A stretch of 61,931 nt of DNA, the filler included, from Hausera hauseri (lineage: Eukaryota): the NCBI GenBank assembly GCA_046269625.1. It is 10 parts of 10 records of this genome, joined end to end, with 100 filler letters (N's around TTAATTAATTAA, not from the genome) between each part and the next. Parts side by side here need not be neighbours in the genome. Positions count along the whole stretch, not along the records: positions 43,905 to 53,158 come from JBJURY010416588.1; 9 more parts are not named here. One strand, written 5' to 3'. Position numbers and translations under genes: made by a program. The notes below the pieces were generated by a model that was not told the origin of the DNA, ran no database searches, and saw only the letters and a program-made list of their open reading frames with translations. Shown here in pieces: positions 43,805 to 53,603 of the stretch; position 1 is the stretch's first letter, and each line of letters begins with the position of its first letter.

Positions 43805-44734
43805 NNNNNNNNNNNNNNNNNNNNNNNNNNNNNNNNNNNNNNNNNNNNTTAATTAATTAANNNNNNNNNNNNNNNNNNNNNNNNNNNNNNNNNNNNNNNN
43901 NNNNGCTGAACGACGTTGAATCACAACTGTACGCAGCCACGCGCCACCTGCACCCTCTGCCGGCCAACACTGACGTGATCGAAATCCTGGACTCGCCACC
44001 GGCCTCGCCCCTGGAGCCCCAGTTGACCGATTATCAATCTTGAAATCAGTGAAAAGCAGAAGTTCTTCTTCTTTTTTTTCTTTTTTCTTAGTCAGAAATG
44101 ACAAAGACTCCTTGGGATTTTTACTACAACGGTTTGACTAATTTTTTTTTACTTTATTAGTAATTTATTTACTTTTACTTTTTAAAATCAAGAGATTAAC
44201 TGATTGACACTGATTTTAAGGCTGCAGCAGTGTTTTTTACTAACTTTAAACTTTTCCTACAAAGATTTGTATTGCTTTTTTGTTTTTTACTGTTACTCTT
44301 TTAATCGAGCTTTAACTAATTTTAAGGCTGCAGTAGTTGTCTTTACTGACTTTTAACTTTTCTTTACTTTTCAATAAAAGTTGATACTGATTTTGTATTT
44401 TTGTCATCAACTATATGAATTACGGGTTAGGTCCCATGGCCTGAGTGTTTCGTCGTGGTTGAACACGTACATCTTAGACAACAAATTTGGTCAGCGGAGA
44501 TTTAACAGGTACATTATCAAAGTGCACAACTAGCAGTCCCGTAGACGGCGTGGTCTGACAGTGCAATGGCCATTTATTACAGTGACTTTTATAACAACAT
44601 ACATCATAGGAGGTGACACCAGTGGTGGAGCGTGGAATTTTTTTAAAGTGTTAGCACATTATATTATTTGTCCAATGTCTCTACTCACTACTGTTTACCC
44701 ATAGATCAAGGCATTAAGGAAAGTTTTAACTAGA

Positions 44735-45024
44735 AAAGGTAAGATAAGATAAAGATAAGGTTGAAAAATAGGCAGTATTGCCTTTTTCTGCTATGGGGGT
44801 AGATTTGTCCTAGAATTTTTTCCTGGACAGCGGCCGTTAGGCCTACTCTTTTTCGATTTCCAGATGCCAAGGGATTTTTAACGTGTACGACGATGTACAT
44901 GAACATCCGATCTCACTACCAAGAGATCGGGGAAATTTATTACTAGAAGATCCAGGAGAAACAAATTCCCCAAGTGCTTCAACCGAGATTCGAACCCCGT
45001 ACCTCTAGCACTTGAGGCGAACGA
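44735..45024 (-). mobile_element. Probable tRNA-derived SINE, 5' truncated
   Basis: B-box GGTTCGAATC on the minus strand (~44985-44998) and a short-repeat tail (AAGAT)n at 44737-44760. Confidence 0.5.
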
Positions 45025-45901
45025 AAGAACATATTTCCAAAGCTTTCACCAGGATATGAAGTTATTTATTTATATTACTTAAATTAAGAAATAGTTTACC
45101 TCTGTACTCGTCTGGTCTAAAGTTCTTGAAGGAAGTAGTGACTACGTAGCTCCTATGGAGCCGAATAGAAACAACACTTTCGCCTCAAGATAATTTTTAA
45201 ACGCGGCAAGAATGCGAATTTCACATCCGTTCGTCTGAACTATGACCTGTAATCATTTCTCAAGTTGCTAACATTGGCATCGACTATCCGCGGTAATTTC
45301 AAAAGAAACACGTCACGAGAATACCCGATCATCACATCAATCCCCCGCAGCACCACCACGGCCACGTTAGCAAGGACAACCTGTGCTAATGTTGCGGTAT
45401 GGGCGAGGGGGAAAATGCTAACAAAGGCTAACAGCATTGCATTTTCCCTTTTGCAATGGAGACCTATTGGATATAAGATTCTCGTCGCTTACAAGATTTT
45501 TAAATTTCGTTTTTAAAATGTTACATTATATATTATATTCCATTTTTTTTTTCATTTTGTAAGCATCGCTAACTCAGTGGAACATGGGGGCCCCGCCAAT
45601 GATGGTGAGGTGTTCAGAGACCTCTAAGTTTTCTTGAGACTTATGATGTGGGTATGTTGTTTCTCACCAAGGTAATAATTCCACCTTTGTGACAGGCTCT
45701 GTCTTGTCTGAAGCATTCGGTGTTGAAAATAATTCACGTATTTCTATAGCAAATTTTTGCACACGTAGCGACTTATTTTTAAAATAGACTATACTAATGA
45801 TGTAACATATATAAGATTTTTCACTAAGAGTGAGTGGGAAAATTTTAAAAGAGGTTGATATCACACAACCAAGAAAAAGTAAGACAAGTGTTGCATCAGG
45901 G

Positions 45902-46490
45902 CAGTGGCGTGCGGTGACTTTCTTCGTTGGGGACTAGCTTCCATGCTACTTTAAGAGGCCTTTAAAAAAGTATTTTTGATATGATGTGTAGAATGTATCT
46001 TAACAAAGAAAATTTCACCGTGACAAAGTACATAGTGTGACTATCTCAAATGATTCAATTTGACATTAAAAATCAAATAAACATACAAACAATGATAAAA
46101 ATGAACACAGCTTCCAACAAACAATTAAACAGAAAAACTATTTTTAAAAGGCTATGAAAACATTGACTTTTGTTTGTGCGTTAATGCTGTCCTCATGTCT
46201 CCTTTCTGAATGAATTTTTCAATGACAACGTCATAAAAAGACCATAGACTTCGCAGTTCATATAGGAGGTCTTTTTCAATTGATAGCAGGGAAAGACTAG
46301 ACAAATTGTCCGCGCTCTGTATGTTACACATATACATCTTTATACGTTTCAAAAAAGAGAAAGTGTGTTCTATAGTGAACATGCTCACTGGTATTGATGA
46401 TACCAAACAATATAATTTATATGTTTCTAGATACACTTCATCTGCTAGTTATGTTTCTTTCAGGAACTTCATTATTCTGTTATGGAGATG
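45902..46490 (-). mobile_element. hAT transposon 3' remnant (dimerisation domain and terminus)
   Basis: IPVSMFTIEHTFSFLKRIKMYMCN..LSSLSLLSIEKD in ORF 46152-46436; terminus CAGTGGCGTGCGGTGA at 45902. Confidence 0.8.
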
Positions 46491-46650
46491 ACTAAAAACC
46501 CTGGTAAAGAAGAAAAAGAAGGCGTTGTTCACTATGTGCCGCGGCCGTCACTCTCAGTGCTGGCAGGCTTTTTCTAGCTTTCATTATGTTGTGGCCTATA
46601 TGCTTTTTGAAGGCAAGCTTTGCAGGCCAAGATATTTCAAACAAATAGAT

Positions 46651-46651
<1 letters not shown>

Positions 46652-46694
<43 letters not shown>
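46652..46694. repeat. (CA)n microsatellite
   Basis: About 21 perfect CA units. Confidence 0.98.
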
Positions 46695-46696
<2 letters not shown>

Positions 46697-46704
46697 ACAC
46701 ATGG

Positions 46705-48053
46705 TGTAAATATATTGTGATAGAAAGTGGAATGAGACTTTAAACATAACGAAACTACTGGAACAATCTAGACAACAGGTCATAAACAACTACGCATATC
46801 CAAATTTAGTTCAGCAAAATGAAATTCACGAGCGGAAAGAGAAACGGAAAGAAAGCGTACAGAGACAGGAGTTGCTTGCTGACTTTCGACACAGAAAGAG
46901 GTGTTAACGACGAGATTGTTATCTCTCAGTGATTTCACATTGAATATCGAAGTTTATGTTTGATGTGGAAAAGGTATCCACTAAAGTTAATTCGTTGTGA
47001 TAAATATTTTGAAGAATTCAGTGAAGAATTTATCGTGTAAAGTATCGATAAAATGAAATAATTATTTGATTGAAGTATTCATCGATGAGCAATGTTCAAG
47101 TTGTCCTTCAAGGCTGTTGTTTGGTTGTAATTTCAAAGTCAGCTATGAAGTAGTTGATTCAAAGAATCAACTGGAGTTAATGTGTCAAGAAATCATCTTG
47201 AATTGTGTCTAATGCCATTTGCTGAAGTAAATTATTCTTGAGAAGCTCATTGCTGTGTAAAGTTATAAATTAAGATTTCTAAGGACATCAGTGTTGAAGT
47301 ATGATTTCAGCAAGTCGCAGAAAAACGTGAGAACAGTTTTGCTTATTATATAAACAGTAGAGGAATTAAAGTGGTCAGAGAATTAGTAATTTACCAATCC
47401 ACATTCAAGTTACAAAGAAGATTATATGGGCACAAAATTTAGCAAAAAGACTGTAACGAGACGTGGTGAAAGCAAGTGAAAATAACTATTGAGTTGTCGA
47501 TATCAAGTTACTTGTTGATATATTTTAGACAATATTTGTATTTTGATACATAATGCGACTGATGCAGTTGCCTGCGGAAGTGTATACTGCCACTCACATA
47601 GACAAGAACATGTAAGATTGCATTCATCTTTATTAACTCATCTGACATGGCTGTATATACGTTGGATAAAGTTAACTGTTATTTACTTTGAACCTAGCTT
47701 GAGTTCTTAGTACGAACTCCATATCTGTGAGAGTATATGCTTGATCATCGTGAGTGTGGTACTAATACGAAACATGTGTACATACTAACGATCGACGATG
47801 GCCAAGAGAGAGATCATAAAGTGTCCATAAAAAAACCACTCCCATAGCATTGTGCGTGCCGTAGGGGGATGAAGTGTTAGTGCCTTCATTTTTCTAGGCT
47901 TCGGCTTTGTGATTAGGGACGCCACAATATTTCATGCCGCATTTATTTCCCAGATTTTACACTCGTATCCATTTCAGGTGTGAACCTGAGGTCCTGTGTC
48001 TGGATTTGAACCCGCGCCACTTGACTCAGCATCCGAATGCAAGTGTCCATACA
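46705..48053 (+). mobile_element. Putative long 5' LTR of the PARG-bearing element (contains a SINE insertion)
   Basis: Non-coding block beginning TGTAAATA and ending CCATACA, upstream of gag; no second copy in the window to confirm it. Confidence 0.4.
47830..48040 (-). mobile_element. tRNA-derived SINE with an 11-bp target-site duplication
   Basis: AAGTGTCCATA at 47819-47829 and 48041-48051; B-box GGTTCAAATCC and terminal T-run on the minus strand. Confidence 0.7.
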
Positions 48054-48428
48054 ATAATAATAATAATAATAAAACTGAGAGACTATATTGGGCTATCACA
48101 CTCTTTAAAACCATCTGATGCCATTGACTGGCCAGGATTTTTTTCCCTCACGATTAAGCAGATGATCAAGTAGAACAGAAAATGAGTGATTGACAGTCAG
48201 GTGACAATAATTATTATTACAGGCATATTTAGAAGTTGGAGACAACAAGTTTTCACCAAGATTGAAATCGACTACAGGTTAAAGCAAAGACAACTGTACA
48301 TTGTCGAGATTTTGTTTTTACTAATATCATAGTGGTTAGATAAAATAATAAGTACGGCAATGTGAACAGAAAAAGTAGTTACCCTTTCTCAAAGCCAATA
48401 GGACACCATTGTAACTGATTATACAGCC

Positions 48429-49420
48429 ATGAAACAAATGTATGAGGAAATGAAAATAATAGTCGAACAACTGCAAAAACAACAAGCAACAATAAGAGAA
48501 TCTAGAGGAGCGAGATCAGGACTCGGAAATACTATTCCAGTTAAGAATGCACTGGAGAAAATTGAAATTATGATTACTAAAATCGATATGAATACCCGTC
48601 ATCAAAACGTCCGTACCTTCATCTAACGATTGACAGGAAAAGATTCCAAACAGTATAAGACCTGGATTTCTCAGGTCGAGAAATATGCGCATCTTCTTAA
48701 GTGGCCGTCAGAAGACAAAAACGAACTTGCTTACATGACTTCTGATGGCCTAGCGAACGTTTTTATCAGACGTAGATTTTGTTCCCAGCCTATAGAAACT
48801 TGGGATGAATTCAAGAGAACTTTGACACACAGATATGCGGAAGTGGCAGACATGCAATATGCAGCTGAAGCGATGAAGAAGATACATCAAGAAAAAGGGG
48901 AATTAGTACAATTTTACCGCACAGAATGTTGAATTTGGCTGAAGACACTTACGCTGGACAAAAGATTTATTCTGAAGAGAGGCAAACTTCTCGTTCCGAC
49001 CTTCATAGATGGATTAAGGAATATCAAACTTGAAATCAAACTCATAAAGGAAGAGCCAACAACGATCCAAGCAGCAATTCCAACAGCTATTGTTGAGAAG
49101 AACTTTAACAAAAGAATCACAATGAGCCTCGGTAGAGATCAGTATGAAGCACGAGAGGAAGAAATTATGGAAATAAATTAATGCAGACCAAGATTTCAAA
49201 ATAGACATTACGAAAGCTACAGATTTAGACACAGAGATGTCGTACATAAGAAGACCGTCCATGAAGTTGAAAGTAAACTGAAATGTTATGGTTGTGTAAA
49301 GAAGGACACTTCATCAAAGAGTGTAGAAATAAAAAACGCAGAACATATGAAAAAAGTCAAGAGTATGTTTCAAATGTGGCAAAGCTGGACATTTTGCAAG
49401 AATATGCAGAACAAGAACCA
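48429..49420 (+). pseudogene. gag: Retrotransposon gag with two CCHC knuckles
   Basis: YKTWISQVEKYA..TWDEFKRTLTHRY..IHQEKGELVQFY, TFIDGL; CYGC/KEGHFIKEC (49284-49324) and CFKCGKAGHFARIC (49366-49407). Confidence 0.9.
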
Positions 49421-50449
49421 ATGTGAACAGAAATGAAGCCAGATACCAATAAAAGTCCTGTTCAGCAATAGGCTCGGTGAGGAACAGGGATACAATTGGA
49501 ACCACTCAAAGTATGATAAATAAAAAAAATAAATTGTCCATACACCTTGAGGTGCGTAGGGGCGTGGTTTCAAGGGCCCCACTAAAACTCACAACAGATG
49601 GCCAGTCCAAAAGTATGATAAGAAAAACTTAATCTCAGCAAAGAAACAGCAAAACCACAGACAAATCCGGATTGACGAGCGTAGCAGAAAAATCAAGAAG
49701 ATTTAACGAATGCAACAAGTATAAATAACCTGAATGATGTATTCCGTAACTCAGAACTACCAGACCCCACATGTCATTGAACAAAGAACATATAAGTCAA
49801 GTTATGAAGTGGAACAGCAACACCAAAGAAGAAAAGTTCAGAACCAAACCCAAACACCCACCCCAACCCAGAGCTTTTTGCAAGACCAAAACCCAGTCAA
49901 ATCCATCCCAATCCAAGTACTAGTCAGTCCCTCCCACCCACAATAACACAGAGGTAACCCACAAATAGAAAGCTAATACAAAGAACGAGACCAAGAAAAA
50001 ACCAACGGAGTCGCCATAGAGAAAATGTATTACAGGACATCCGAGAAAGATTATGGGAACAGATACGAAGGAATGGGATACCATTCGTAGCAAATGAAGC
50101 ACAAAGAAACATGAAGACTATAGGACGAACGGTATGCCAAGACCACCATGGAAAACTAGAGTTAACCATAAGACTTCCAACGCTCACCATAGAGATTACA
50201 GAAGCGTTCATAACGACATGCAGACAGATATGCCATACAACCCGAAGAATAAGTTATTAGATCCGAAAAGATGGCAATCCCCGTGAATGTGGGACCCAAG
50301 CTTCAATATGGGGACAGGGATGCATCAAAGCTTTCACAGCCAGCCTCCAGTCAACAAGGTGAATGCGTCCATCTGCACAAGTCAAGAAGGATGACCAAGC
50401 GCCTGCTGCCAAGAGAAGACAACTCGCAGTTACAGAGGCATAAATCCAT

Positions 50450-51600
50450 CCATCTATACCAAGATAAAAGTTTGAAGCTCTTCACAAGTTCTTCGAGAGA
50501 AACAAGCAAGATACAATTATAAAAAAAAAATTCTTTCAGAAAACTCTCCCAAATATTCCGAAATTGGCTCTCCAATTACCAGAACATTGTCTAAAAGCTT
50601 TCCCGATTCTAAAACAACACACCAATATGAAAATCACTTTGAGTCAGCAACAGGTTGCATGTCTTTTTAGCAAGTGCATTCGTATGCACATTCCCTAAAC
50701 ATAACTACAGACCGAATTATCGGCGACTACCAGAAATTAATTTTGTGAACATGAACAGGGGTCAACATGTTGAACAGAAAATAGAAAAGCTCTAGTGCAT
50801 TATCAACAATTTTCAAAGAGTAACTACTGATATGCCGAATCGAGCAGTGACATACGCGCGTCAGAAAGTATCAAAAGGCGAATTCCAAACCAAGACAAGT
50901 AAGACGTTCACTAAACTCCAGATGTCAACAGAGGGAACTATTGAAGATCAAGGGAGAGGAATGCTACAAGAGAACTTTACGAACAAAAATATAGGTGGAA
51001 GTATACTTGGACACGGTATACCACAAGAAGAGATTTGCCTTTTGATCTGTCCTTAGATGATTTTGCACGACTGTTCACAGAATCATTGACAGAGAGTGAT
51101 GTCCGTATCACAACAGGATGCGAACGCTTCAACAATTGCGAGGGATACTCGAATATGTTCAAGTTTAAAGGCAATTATGAAGACACAACAGAACGAGATG
51201 ACCAAGGTAAAAGATACACCGAAGTAGTAGCTATGGATGCACTATTTATTAAAGATTTTAAGACCCAATTTAAGAAAGATAGCGTTCTTAGAGAACTGTA
51301 TAAAGCTTACTGTGCGTTTAAAGGAATGAACAAATCAGCAGTGTGTACAGGAAATTGGGGTTGTGGTGCATTCAGAGGTGACAAACAATTAAAAGCTAGC
51401 AATTAGTTAATGTCACCGAGCGCAGCAGGTAGTGACACTTATCTCACATTCGGCGGTGCTAAATTCAACGACGCATTACGACAGTTACACAATATCCTCA
51501 TAGAAGGAAAAGTGAATATACAAAGGCCTTACCCATGATTGAAACCTATAACAAACATCTGCGTTACGTAGCAGTTAACCAAGAATCTTTATTCCACTTC
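50450..51600 (+). pseudogene. PARG: Poly(ADP-ribose) glycohydrolase catalytic domain, downstream of gag
   Basis: TLPNIPKLALQLP, ITLSQQQVACL/LASAFVCTFP, EINF, EKL*CI, GTIED, NFTNKNIGGSILGHGIPQEEI (QEE 51024-51032), GCERFN, EVVAMDAL, RELYKAY, TGNWGCGAFRGDKQLK. Confidence 0.93.
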
Positions 51601-52151
51601 ATCATCAAGAATATAGAAAGACAACGCAAGAAAAACTTGAACATCCAAGAAATGAGGTCCGATCGTGATGTAGTAGAAACCAGAAATACTGAGTCACTGA
51701 GAAGCCTACAACATGTCGAGATGCAGGTAAATGAACAAGAATCCACATTAGACAGAATGATGAAAGCAGACACGTCTATGGAAGCAGCAGCAGTTGAAGA
51801 AGTCACGACACGGAAGAACGATATAAAGCCGAAATACAGATAATGGAATTACGAGTGAAAGATCTTAACGATGAAATCAATATATACAAAGACAAGTGCG
51901 AAGATGCAGCAGCAACGAATTTATGTTTAGCTAACGAATTAAAACAAGAGCAAGAAGATAAAAAGCAAACCAAAGAACTCAGTGAGACATTACAAAGAAA
52001 AATATGTACATTACAAAGCCAAATAAAGCAGATTGAAACACAAGACTTGAAAAGCAACGAAGTTGAAAGAGAACTCAAAAATGTGGATGCAGAATTAATC
52101 AACGAACAACACAGTCACTTGAAAAATAGTGACGCGTCAGGATTGCCCTGA
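51600..52151 (+). pseudogene. Coiled-coil continuation after PARG
   Basis: E/K/Q-rich heptad-like ORFs 51535-51843 and 51843-52151. Confidence 0.55.
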
Positions 52152-52529
52152 TTAGTCATTCTCGCACTCATCGTTCCATTTCTCCCGCCCTTCCTACTTC
52201 TAGTGACTATCCCTCATGATTTCATTGACTCCTTGGTGAAGAACATGGTCATCATCTGTTAGGTGGACGAACAACATTAGTTATTATACTGTATTAGCTC
52301 TATCCCTCTTGTCCGTGGCACACACTGATGTTATATTACATAGGTTTATAGGACAACGACCATCGTAATGACGGAGGTCATGGTTGTGACAAAAGAAATT
52401 CTCTGGCTTCACCCGCCGGCCTATAATCATGTTTGCATTTTCAGTGACTTCATGAGCATACCAACAAACATCGAGACTGGTGTTGTGCGCTGCGGTGGTT
52501 CACCTCTTTCATGTGGTCAGCGCCTGGTA

Positions 52530-52870
52530 GTTTGGCTTTCATTTTTTTCGCGTGGGTACGCAGGGTTGGCAGGTAACGAACGGGCTGACAAGAAAAGCAG
52601 CAATTTCATAGGAAGGAGCAATGGATCGCTTTGGCGTCAATTCTGCCTTAGGAATATTGGTAGCACAGAGGGGTCAAACATCACACACATACTCTATGAA
52701 CATGTTAATGGAGCTTGGCGTGAGGAGAGGAGAGGCCAGGCGAGAGTATTTCGCTGGTGAATAGAGAAGGGTGGTGAACCAGCACGAGAGGTTAACATGA
52801 ATACTCTGGAGCTTCTGCTGGGCCGAAAATCGTAGCACCTACGGACGTGTCCAGCGTGCAGTGATGATGA
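52530..52870 (+). mobile_element. Non-LTR retrotransposon RNase H / 3' end remnant
   Basis: GYAGLAGNERADK resembles the GHxGxxGNExAD RNase H motif of LINEs. Confidence 0.5.
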
Positions 52871-53603
52871 CACTACTAACTTTTGTTTGTTTGGCATTCG
52901 GACAGGTCCACCTGTTTTCCTTCCCGAAGAGCAGACGGGTACTAGGCACGTGACAAGGCTTATCATCGTGGCGTCCGATTCCATGCGTTGCGCAGCCTTT
53001 TTGAGTGCACCCTTCAGCTGGGGCTCCACATTTTTTTTTTTTGCTTTGCCATTAGTGTTTAAGGACCCGTGCAGCCGTCTTCGGCACAGTCTAGGCTTTT
53101 TTAATTGAACCTCCACCATAAGATAGGGACAATCGGTAGGAGCGGCCAAGGGTATCTCNNNNNNNNNNNNNNNNNNNNNNNNNNNNNNNNNNNNNNNNNN
53201 NNTTAATTAATTAANNNNNNNNNNNNNNNNNNNNNNNNNNNNNNNNNNNNNNNNNNNNGTCGCTATTTTTAGCCGCATACGGGAGATTGGGAGATTGAGC
53301 GAAGTACCCGTGACCAGGGTAAACTGCTTTTTTCACCTATAAAACTCCATGTATAACCCGGTCGGAGTTGCGTTAGTTTGAATGGATGTACTGTTTCGTC
53401 TTGATATGTTAATAATTAGTTTTAACTAAAGACTTGGTGACACAGGAGGTTTCGTATTCTGGTGCCAATCGATGGAAGAAACAATTTCTTTGATATCAAC
53501 AAGTTAGCAGCGGGTTTTCCCGTTTTCTTAATTCTTTAATCACTTATGAAAGAAGTTACCAAGGGAAACCATGTATGCTAGACGTTCCTTAAATTTCTAT
53601 ATA

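What the first reader, a model, noticed from the sequence alone, without database searches (positions are those of the whole stretch)
48429..52151. Retrotransposon gag extended by a poly(ADP-ribose) glycohydrolase domain
Seen: gag capsid, two CCHC knuckles, a P/Q/T-rich linker, ~380 codons covering the PARG helical and macrodomain parts (GGS-x7-QEE, TGNWGCGAF) and then a coiled coil. All are on one strand, intronless, with uniform A-rich composition and no visible insertion boundary. Known: PARG (GGG-x6-8-QEE) reverses PARP signalling, which acts in DNA-break repair, antiviral defence and parthanatos; some viruses carry ADP-ribosyl hydrolases, but this is not standard LTR-element cargo. Inference: the element captured host PARG as part of Gag, to counter ADP-ribosylation defence or manage PAR at integration breaks. 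This copy is dead, and its pol is not on the contig.
Basis: partly seen in the sequence, partly recalled or inferred. Interest (0 to 1): 0.86.

Follow-up and report, generated by a model that had tools for sequence, protein, structure and literature searches.

The report
Dead gag plus snail PARG retrocopy
A broken retrotransposon gag remnant sits directly upstream of a broken, intronless copy of a land-snail-type host PARG gene, and it looks like a one-off dead chimeric retrocopy rather than a working element that carries PARG as cargo.

Summary
On the + strand, 48402-52151 carries a gag-like region (weak Pfam match), two CCHC knuckles (one intact, one split by a frameshift), about 1 kb of unassignable A/C-rich sequence, a PARG catalytic domain (PARG_cat_N and PARG_cat_C, E down to 5e-37, GGS-x7-QEE, TGNWGCGAF) and a helical K/E-rich tail. 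Everything is broken by stops and frameshifts.

The PARG part is of host origin. It is sister to PARGs of stylommatophoran land snails (UFBoot 98) and is contiguous where cellular PARG genes are split by introns. It has lost 9 of 48 universally invariant residues, which fits about 0.05-0.1 neutral substitutions per site after inactivation.

I found no LTRs, no pol, no poly(A) or target-site duplication, and no second copy in any collection I could reach. No gag domain occurs in about 270 related PARG proteins. A TAA stop follows the second knuckle, so a single Gag-PARG reading frame is not shown.

Best reading: a dead chimeric retrocopy of host PARG joined to an LTR-element gag by reverse-transcriptase template switching, a known process called LTR-mediated retroposition. 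A functional, amplifying Gag-PARG element is not excluded, because the source genome could not be searched, but nothing supports it. Interest is low to moderate.

The parts
48402..49294 (+). Gag-like (capsid-type) region in one reading frame, with an ATG at 48429 and in-frame stops at 48624, 48930 and 49179
   Evidence: Searches give the frames and stops; piece 48627-48929 matches Retrotrans_gag (E 1e-3) and Ty3_capsid (E 5e-3), both below the Pfam cut-offs. One search places the motif TWDEFK at 48798-48815. No PDB sequence hit. The AF2 model is all-helical but has pLDDT 51.
49284..49324 (+). First CCHC zinc knuckle (CYGC ... EGHFIKEC), split by a frameshift
   Evidence: CYGC is in frame 2 and EGHFIKEC is in frame 1; weak zf-CCHC_2 match (E 0.075).
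49366..49407 (+). Second CCHC zinc knuckle (CFKCGKAGHFARIC), intact. Its frame closes with a TAA at 49450-49452.
   Evidence: zf-CCHC E 2e-7, 31.2 bits, above the cut-off. Searches give the sequence and the stop.
49453..50461 (+). Unassigned A/C-rich 'linker' that translates as Q/T/P-rich. It holds the A-run ATAAATAAAAAAAATAAATT at 49517-49536 and a possible decayed PARG accessory region at about 50167-50259 (MPYN at 50230-50241).
   Evidence: open frames no longer than chance (p = 0.21); no Pfam hit; a weak collinear match to the mollusc PARG accessory region, not significant (p = 0.06-0.08). One search gives the sequence.
50462..50792 (+). PARG helical domain (PARG_cat_N), with a frameshift near 50660-50677 and a TAG stop at 50793
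   Evidence: E 4.3e-14 and 1.2e-6; tblastn and HMM alignments, HMM positions 218-327.
50796..51523 (+). PARG macrodomain (PARG_cat_C). The catalytic loop reads ENFTNKNIGGSILGHGIPQEE (50970-51032) and TGNWGCGAF lies at 51347-51373. There is a frameshift near 51054-51065, a TAG stop at 51404 and a frameshift near 51523.
   Evidence: E 3e-13 and 5.3e-37. One search gives the alignment; human PARG structures at E 7e-27. One search lists the invariant residues that are lost. One search gives the motif coordinates.
51526..52151 (+). C-terminal tail. The first ~45 codons resemble the PARG C-terminal helices (LFHFI at 51589-51603). About 165 K/E/Q-rich codons that look like coiled coil follow. There is a frameshift near 51800-51840 and a TGA stop at 52149-52151. 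The A-rich block ends here.
   Evidence: weak HMM match to positions 562-663. Taxilin and CENP-Q weak hits; open-frame length p = 0.008; the cumulative A-T maximum is at 52142.

Best explanation
The locus is a dead chimeric retrocopy. A cDNA of the host's own PARG mRNA was joined, in sense orientation, to the 5' part (gag and nucleocapsid) of an LTR-type retrotransposon. The host is a gastropod close to stylommatophoran land snails.

The most likely mechanism is template switching by reverse transcriptase between the element's RNA and a co-packaged host mRNA. This is LTR-mediated retroposition, the same process that made gag-onc retroviruses and the Drosophila, zebrafish and maize chimeras. 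The host cDNA takes the place of pol.

Shown:
- The PARG is of host origin and intronless.
- Gag and PARG lie on one strand inside one A-rich block.
- There is no poly(A) or target-site duplication.
- Gag and PARG are broken to a similar degree.

Inferred:
- The template-switch mechanism.
- That the chimera has been neutral since about the time it integrated. Since then it has accumulated roughly 0.05-0.1 substitutions per site, several stops and frameshifts, and loss of catalytic-loop residues.
- That it has no present function.
For: - Host origin. In maximum-likelihood trees the X-joined PARG translation is sister to Bradybaena and Candidula (Stylommatophora). Support is SH-aLRT 97 in the quick tree and UFBoot 98 / SH-aLRT 94 in the careful tree. 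It sits inside Heterobranchia, and the rest of the tree follows mollusc taxonomy.
- RNA intermediate. PARG homology runs without gaps through 50462-51526. In two metagenomic eukaryote loci the same region is split into at least 5-6 exons of 30-60 residues.
- Not a LINE-type processed pseudogene as it now stands. There is no poly(A) tail and no flanking direct repeats. The A-rich block stops within 10 nt of the last stop codon, with no 3' UTR.
- Physical association. The parts lie on the same strand, and the A-over-T excess is continuous across 48.2-52.15 kb. Base use at all three codon positions is nearly identical in gag and PARG. Break counts are similar: 3 stops and 2 frameshifts in about 350 gag codons, against 2 stops and 2-3 frameshifts in about 350 PARG codons.
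- Neutral decay. 9 of 48 columns that are invariant in 64 other metazoan PARGs are changed, whereas real PARGs keep 92-100%. A simulation at K of about 0.08-0.1 reproduces about 17-20% changed residues and 3-4 expected stops, against 2 observed.
- Precedent. Tan et al. 2016 (PMC5131818) describe retrocopies in animals that replace part of the internal ORFs of LTR retrotransposons. These are often partial copies without poly(A) or target-site duplication.
Against: - No LTR, primer-binding site, polypurine tract or pol remnant was found in the piece. The defining return to element sequence on the 3' side is not shown. Only 1 kb lies downstream, and its composition is different (GC 0.46-0.50).
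- The gag identification is sub-threshold. No relative of this gag was found anywhere.
- The 1-kb linker and the 165-codon tail are unexplained.
- Junction microsimilarity cannot be checked without the parental sequences.
- Chance juxtaposition in a transposon-rich region is possible. A hAT remnant lies 2 kb upstream.
Confidence: 0.5

Rival explanations
1. Two unrelated events. An ordinary processed pseudogene of host PARG, made by LINE machinery, landed by chance beside or inside an already dead gag fragment in a transposon-rich region. Its 3' UTR and poly(A) were later lost to a deletion or to the insertion that now starts at about 52152.
For: - A TAA stop closes the knuckle frame at 49450, and an A-run at 49517-49536 is followed by a GC-rich stretch that could mark a boundary.
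- The distance from there to the first PARG match fits the ~290-residue N-terminal region of snail PARGs, so a nearly full-length cDNA could start near 49540-49740.
- The neighbourhood holds other transposon debris.
- Composition changes sharply at 52142-52151.
Against: - No poly(A) tail and no target-site duplication.
- Same strand and direct adjacency to a gag remnant is unlikely by chance.
- Break density is equal in gag and PARG, whereas an older gag should be more broken.
- The A-excess is continuous across the supposed boundary.
- The N-terminal PARG homology needed for a full-length cDNA is not significant.
Confidence: 0.2
2. This is a decayed member of a family of non-autonomous LTR elements that carried PARG as selected cargo, either fused to or downstream of Gag. 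The PARG would remove poly(ADP-ribose) laid down by host PARPs during defence or at integration breaks.
For: - The architecture is gag, then nucleocapsid, then host enzyme in sense orientation, in one A-rich block, with pol absent.
- The tail ORFs are longer than chance, which suggests extra coding sequence beyond a normal PARG.
- LTR elements are known to acquire enzymatic ORFs (bdelloid dUTPase, GDSL lipase and DEDDy exonuclease ORF3s; PMC5408684).
- Chimeric retrocopies can be remobilised as non-autonomous elements (PMC5131818).
Against: - No second copy and no LTRs were found.
- No gag, CCHC or RT domain occurs in the 10 best PARG representatives, in the 120 best relatives of Physella PARG (precomputed Pfam column) or in the 30 longest PARG relatives.
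- No similarity was found between the gag, linker or tail pieces and the 286 proteins collected by then.
- After correcting for decay, the PARG is about 65% identical to Bradybaena PARG. That is what the host gene of a somewhat more distant snail would give, so long independent evolution inside an element need not be assumed.
- Four full-text literature searches returned no listed title reporting a PARG-carrying retroelement; only the listed hits were looked at.
- These negatives are weak, because the source genome was not searchable.
Confidence: 0.15
3. A decayed host gene. It would have been a PARG retrogene or paralogue that recruited a domesticated gag-derived N-terminal part, and was later pseudogenised.
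For: - PARG duplicates exist in gastropods: two in Bradybaena, and two lineages in Nucella and Babylonia.
- PARG occurs fused to other domains (kinase, PARP, TRIM) in gene models.
Against: - No gag-PARG protein occurs among the relatives examined.
- The locus sits among transposon remnants.
- Nothing suggests regulatory or intron structure.
Confidence: 0.05

Closest known systems
LTR-mediated retroposition chimeras (Tan et al. 2016, Genome Res, PMC5131818). Earlier cases are yeast Ty1-mRNA chimeras, maize Bs1 and human HERV-K/FAM8A1, as cited there.
   Same: An intronless host-gene copy lies in sense orientation inside or next to LTR-retrotransposon internal sequence. It replaces part of the element's ORFs and has no poly(A) or target-site duplication of its own.
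   Different: Only the 5' (gag) side of the element is seen. No LTRs or 3' element sequence are on the contig. Junction microsimilarity is untestable. The locus is old and decayed, whereas the published cases are young. The host gene captured, PARG, turned up in none of the retrocopy or transposon papers listed by four full-text searches.
Acutely transforming retroviruses with gag-onc fusions (established knowledge; the capture mechanism is cited in PMC5131818)
   Same: Gag is retained at the 5' end, a host cDNA follows in the same orientation, pol is missing, and the product is replication-defective.
   Different: A fused reading frame is not shown here: a stop follows the knuckles and 1 kb of unassigned sequence intervenes. 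There is no evidence of selection, spread or a helper element.
LTR retrotransposons with acquired enzymatic ORFs (bdelloid rotifer dUTPase, GDSL esterase and DEDDy exonuclease ORF3; Rodriguez et al. 2017, PMC5408684)
   Same: A host-type enzyme domain is associated with a gag-bearing retroelement.
   Different: Those are multi-copy families that keep pol and LTRs, and the extra ORF lies after pol. Here there is one dead copy, no pol, and the enzyme lies after gag.
Canonical metazoan PARG (Pfam PF20811 and PF05028; human PARG structures such as 4a0d and 6oak)
   Same: Both catalytic subdomains are present in order. The QEE and TGNWGCGAF motifs are kept. Identity to Bradybaena similaris PARG is 53%.
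   Different: It is intronless, broken by stops and frameshifts, and has lost 9 universally invariant residues (including GGG to GGS and D to N in the loop). The N-terminal region is not recognisable, and the C-terminal tail is about 130 residues longer than in snail PARGs.

Membership tests
PARG (poly(ADP-ribose) glycohydrolase, PF20811 + PF05028) | Sequence homology to both catalytic subdomains, in order | tested here: met
   PARG_cat_N 4e-14 and PARG_cat_C 5e-37, all above the cut-offs. HMM positions 218-579; human PARG structures at 7e-27.
PARG (poly(ADP-ribose) glycohydrolase, PF20811 + PF05028) | Catalytic signature GGG-x6-8-QEE with the preceding D-F-A-N | tested here: not met
   The window reads E-N-F-T-N-K-N-I-G-G-S-ILGHGIP-QEE. 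D to N, A to T and G to S fall in columns that are invariant in 64 other PARGs. QEE is kept.
PARG (poly(ADP-ribose) glycohydrolase, PF20811 + PF05028) | Diphosphate-binding loop (TGNWGCGAFxGD) | tested here: met
   TGNWGCGAFRGD starts at 51347.
PARG (poly(ADP-ribose) glycohydrolase, PF20811 + PF05028) | Uninterrupted reading frame or an expressible protein | tested here: not met
   Stops at 50793 and 51404, and frameshifts near 50665, 51060 and 51523.
PARG (poly(ADP-ribose) glycohydrolase, PF20811 + PF05028) | PAR-hydrolysing activity | not testable with these tools
   This needs a biochemical assay. The present copy cannot encode a full protein.
LTR retrotransposon (Ty3/gypsy- or BEL-like) | Gag with a capsid-type domain | tested here: inconclusive
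   Retrotrans_gag E 1e-3 (19.7 bits against a 24.1 cut-off) and Ty3_capsid E 5e-3. No PDB hit. The AF2 model is of low confidence.
LTR retrotransposon (Ty3/gypsy- or BEL-like) | Nucleocapsid CCHC zinc knuckle(s) downstream of the capsid | tested here: met
   One intact knuckle (zf-CCHC 2e-7) and one split by a frameshift.
LTR retrotransposon (Ty3/gypsy- or BEL-like) | Long terminal repeats flanking the internal region | tested here: not met
   No direct repeat links the 4.5 kb upstream to the 1 kb downstream. A 3' LTR could lie beyond the contig end.
LTR retrotransposon (Ty3/gypsy- or BEL-like) | Pol (protease, RT, RNase H, integrase) | tested here: not met
   No Pfam hit in the pieces between or after gag and PARG. 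An RNase H-like motif seen by eye at 52400-52620 has no tool support.
LTR retrotransposon (Ty3/gypsy- or BEL-like) | Repeated in the genome | not testable with these tools
   The source genome is in no collection on hand.
LTR-mediated chimeric retrocopy (Tan et al. 2016) | Intronless copy of a host gene | tested here: met
   Host placement in the trees. The homology is contiguous where cellular PARG genes have at least 5-6 exons.
LTR-mediated chimeric retrocopy (Tan et al. 2016) | Retrocopy flanked on both sides by parts of one LTR retrotransposon, replacing internal ORF sequence | tested here: inconclusive
   The 5' side is gag and nucleocapsid on the same strand. The 3' side has only 1 kb, of different composition, with no recognised element domain.
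LTR-mediated chimeric retrocopy (Tan et al. 2016) | Microsimilarity at the switch points | not testable with these tools
   This needs the parental PARG mRNA and an autonomous copy of the element.
LTR-mediated chimeric retrocopy (Tan et al. 2016) | No poly(A) tail or target-site duplication belonging to the retrocopy itself | tested here: met
LINE-type processed pseudogene | 3' poly(A) tail and flanking target-site duplication | tested here: not met
   There is no A-tract after 52151 and no flanking direct repeats. The 3' end may have been lost secondarily.

The most novel reading that the evidence does not exclude
This could be a fossil of a family of non-autonomous snail LTR elements in which pol was replaced by a host-derived PARG carrying an added coiled-coil tail. 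The PARG would be expressed with or after Gag and packaged into particles to strip poly(ADP-ribose) from element or host proteins. That would counter PARP-based restriction or tune PARP signalling at integration breaks.
Probability: 0.12. Interest if true: 0.8.

Novelty: new member of a known kind. Interest (0 to 1): 0.3.

Why it matters
If it is the one-off chimera that I think it is, it adds a mollusc example to LTR-mediated retroposition, which has been documented mainly in insects, vertebrates, yeast and plants. It also shows how a retroelement can place a complete host enzyme domain behind gag, which is the raw material for cargo acquisition.

It would matter much more if intact, multi-copy gag-PARG elements exist in the source snail. 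Retroelements carrying an eraser of poly(ADP-ribose) would be a new form of counter-defence, parallel to the macrodomains of RNA viruses. Their existence would also imply that PARP activity restricts retrotransposition in molluscs. The present data cannot decide this, because the genome itself could not be searched.

Tried and rejected
Searches that found nothing useful:
- Other copies. The search for homologous proteins with the PARG piece gave a best hit of 53% identity and no self-hit; with the gag piece it gave nothing. Metagenome scans with gag found nothing. Metagenome scans with PARG found only distant or intron-bearing PARGs. Viral contig scans found nothing.
I could not fetch a snail PARG gene or check whether the paralogue P0188 is itself a retrocopy.
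- LTRs were sought with the repeat finder and with a sensitive blastn of the flanks. Only chance matches of 23 nt or less turned up. There are no tRNA genes and no Rfam families.
- Gag fold. The single-sequence AF2 model had pLDDT 51, so I ran no fold search. The PDB sequence search gave only noise.

Tests that did not reach significance:
- PARG homology upstream of 50462. The global HMM, a mollusc accessory-region HMM and low-stringency tblastn gave only a weak collinear match at 50167-50259. The chain score has p = 0.06 against shuffles. I treat it as suggestive only.
- I first read the stop just before KFEALH as a simple W-to-stop change. The codon is TAA, so I dropped that reading.
- Synonymous-site A-richness as a sign of long residence in an element. 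Gag and PARG have near-identical codon-position composition. Without the host's codon usage this does not discriminate, so I did not use it.
- The RNase H reading of 52344-52757 has no Pfam or PDB support.

Rejected:
- A human or vertebrate source. The nearest relatives are gastropods.
- Long functional evolution of PARG inside an element. The long terminal branch (1.1-1.36) is explained by about 20% neutral residue change hitting invariant columns.
Full report
**What is there.** The piece 43905-53158 is AT-rich eukaryotic DNA with no N. On the + strand, 48402-52151 is a block with a strong A-over-T excess. The cumulative A-T curve rises steadily from about 48.2-48.4 kb to a maximum at 52142 and then falls. 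GC jumps from about 0.38 to 0.46-0.50 downstream. No long ORF spans the block; it is cut into stop-to-stop pieces in all three frames.

**Gag part.** 48402-49294 stays in one frame with three in-frame stops (TAA 48624, TGA 48930, TAA 49179).
- The piece 48627-48929 matches Pfam Retrotrans_gag (E 1e-3, 19.7 bits against a 24.1 cut-off) and Ty3_capsid (E 5e-3).
- Two CX2CX4HX4C knuckles follow. The first is split by a frameshift (CYGC 49284-49295, EGHFIKEC 49301-49324).
- The second is intact (CFKCGKAGHFARIC 49366-49407; zf-CCHC E 2e-7, above the cut-off).
- The frame of the second knuckle closes with a TAA at 49450. An A-run, ATAAATAAAAAAAATAAATT, lies at 49517-49536 and is followed by a GC-rich stretch.
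- The gag call therefore rests on sub-threshold capsid matches plus a correctly placed pair of knuckles. No relative of this gag was found in the protein database, in metagenome or viral contigs, or in the PDB. A single-sequence AF2 model was all-helical but too poor to use (pLDDT 51).

**PARG part.**
- Pfam finds PARG_cat_N in 50468-50695 (4e-14) and 50643-50792 (1e-6). It finds PARG_cat_C in 50796-51053 (3e-13) and 50945-51403 (5e-37).
- tblastn with gastropod PARGs covers 50456-51526 in three collinear segments. Identity to Bradybaena similaris is 50-57%.
- An HMM built from 58 full-length PARGs covers model positions 218-579. It continues weakly into the C-terminal helices up to about 51790.
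- Breaks in this part: frameshifts near 50665, 51060 and 51523, and stops at 50793 and 51404.
TGNWGCGAF lies at 51347-51373. Human PARG structures match at 7e-27.

**The two unassigned stretches.**
- The 1-kb linker (49453-50461; A 40%, C 23%, T 17%) has no Pfam hit, and its open frames are no longer than chance. A weak match to the conserved accessory region that precedes PARG_cat_N in molluscs sits at the expected collinear place. It covers 50167-50259 and includes MPYN, as in land-snail PARGs. It is not significant (chain score p = 0.06, single hit p = 0.08).
- The tail (51527-52148) has open frames of 126 and 117 codons. The 117-codon frame is the one tested against dinucleotide shuffles, and it is longer than they give (p = 0.008). 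The tail also gives weak hits to coiled-coil families. It is about 130 residues longer than the 65-80-residue tails of the Bradybaena and Candidula PARGs.

**Where the PARG came from.** A full scan of 1.84 billion representative proteins returned ordinary PARGs. The best by identity are gastropods (Physella 66%, Elysia 62% over the best-conserved 112 residues).

For the trees I joined the window's pieces with X at every break, inside scripts only. No mended or consensus sequence was made.
- A 65-taxon tree recovers mollusc taxonomy and puts the window's PARG sister to the stylommatophoran land snails Bradybaena and Candidula (SH-aLRT 97; taxonomy).
- A careful 33-taxon tree gives the same place, with UFBoot 98 and SH-aLRT 94.
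- The source is therefore a gastropod near Stylommatophora, not a vertebrate and not human, and the PARG is of the host's own kind.

The homology is contiguous here. In two metagenomic eukaryote loci the same region is split into at least 5-6 exons of 30-60 residues, separated by stretches of about 240-750 nt that I take for introns. The copy therefore passed through RNA.

**How decayed is it?** At 48 alignment columns that are invariant in all 64 other metazoan PARGs, the window keeps 39 (81%). Nine real PARGs tested the same way keep 92-100%. The nine losses include D to N, A to T, G to S and F to L in the catalytic loop.

A simple mutation simulation on the in-frame codons shows that 0.08-0.1 substitutions per site gives 17-20% changed residues and 3-4 expected stops. 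Two stops are observed, which is compatible.

Dividing the 53% identity to Bradybaena by the retained fraction gives about 65%. That lies between Bradybaena-Candidula (75%) and Bradybaena-Physella (59%). This is what the host gene of a somewhat more distant land snail or slug would show. The long terminal branch (1.1-1.36) therefore needs no long independent history. A normal host PARG sequence followed by modest neutral decay is enough.

**Is it an element carrying PARG?** I found none of the evidence that would show it.
- There are no LTRs or other long direct repeats between the 4.5 kb upstream and the 1 kb downstream, no tRNA-like primer site, and no pol domain.
- There is no second copy. 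The best protein in the 84-268-residue range is 53% identical and there is no self-hit, so the source genome is not in that database. Metagenome and viral scans gave nothing close.
- None of the 10 best representative PARGs has a gag, CCHC, RT or integrase domain.
- The same holds for the 120 best relatives of Physella PARG, by their precomputed Pfam domains, and for the 30 longest PARG relatives.
- The gag, linker and tail pieces resemble none of the 286 proteins collected by then.
- Four full-text literature searches found no report of a PARG-bearing retroelement.
- These negatives are limited.

**Best explanation.** The features match LTR-mediated retroposition as described by Tan et al. 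2016 (PMC5131818). In that process, reverse transcriptase in the particle switches from the element's RNA to a co-packaged host mRNA. The product is a chimera in which host cDNA replaces part of the element's internal ORFs. Such copies are often partial, lack a poly(A) tail and target-site duplication, and are flanked by element sequence.

Here the 5' flank (gag and nucleocapsid), the orientation, the absence of poly(A) and target-site duplication, the end of the A-rich block at the last stop codon and the equal break density in gag and PARG all fit. The 3' return to the element is not seen. Only 1 kb is available, its composition is different, and an RNase H-like motif seen by eye there has no tool support. 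I put this reading at about 0.5.

**Rivals.**
- Chance juxtaposition of a LINE-type processed pseudogene with an old gag remnant: 0.2. It is favoured by the stop and A-run after the knuckles and by the transposon-rich setting, with a hAT remnant at 46155-46436 on the minus strand. It is disfavoured by the lack of poly(A) and target-site duplication and by the same-strand adjacency.
It uses the same capture step but adds amplification and selection, and there is no evidence for either.
- A decayed host gag-PARG fusion gene: 0.05.

**Comparison with known things.** As a sequence, the PARG part belongs to the PARG family by homology. It fails the GGG signature and the intact-ORF criteria, so it is a PARG pseudogene. 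The gag part is retroelement-like but cannot be placed in a clade.

As a locus it is closest to LTR-retrocopy chimeras and, by architecture, to gag-onc retroviruses. It differs from the multi-copy LTR elements with acquired enzymatic ORFs, such as the bdelloid ORF3s (PMC5408684). Those keep pol and LTRs.

**Verdict.**
Host PARG joined to a retroelement gag is plausible. A Gag-PARG fusion protein, an element family and a counter-defence role are not shown.
- Novelty: a new member of a known kind.
- Interest: 0.3. The more novel reading keeps a probability of roughly 0.12, and one BLAST of the source genome would settle it.

Noticed in passing
window 46155-46436, minus strand: Remnant of a hAT-transposase C-terminal dimerisation domain (Pfam PF05699, E 1.8e-4, just above the cut-off). 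It shows that the neighbourhood is transposon debris.
   Followed up: partly
window 52344-52757, + strand: By eye this is an RNase H-type motif pair (IFSDFMS... and GYAGLAGNERAD), as in LINE, retroviral or cellular RNase H. It has no Pfam or PDB support. The region has GC 0.46-0.50, unlike the A-rich block upstream. It could be a 5'-truncated LINE or, less likely, the element's own pol.
   Followed up: partly
window 46652-46694 and 48053-48072: A perfect (CA)21 microsatellite and a short (AAT)6-7 run.
   Followed up: no
window 44209-44256 and 44315-44362: Two 48-nt direct repeats, 85% identical and 106 nt apart, near the left end of the piece. Origin unknown.
   Followed up: no
Proteins P0001, P0188, P0223 and one member of alignment A2: PARG occurs in unusual gene models in public proteomes: a tandem double PARG in Macrostomum lignano (1500 aa), kinase plus PARG in Bradybaena similaris, PARP plus PARG in Potamilus streckersoni, and B-box/TRIM coiled coil plus PARG in one representative. 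Some may be merged gene models.
   Followed up: no
Tree: Gastropods repeatedly carry two PARG paralogues: Nucella and Babylonia share an old duplication, and Bradybaena has a recent one.
   Followed up: no
Loci L007 and L008 (marine metagenome contigs): These are fragments of intron-rich PARG genes from unidentified eukaryotes, 50-75% identical per exon to snail PARG. I used them only to show the exon structure.
   Followed up: partly
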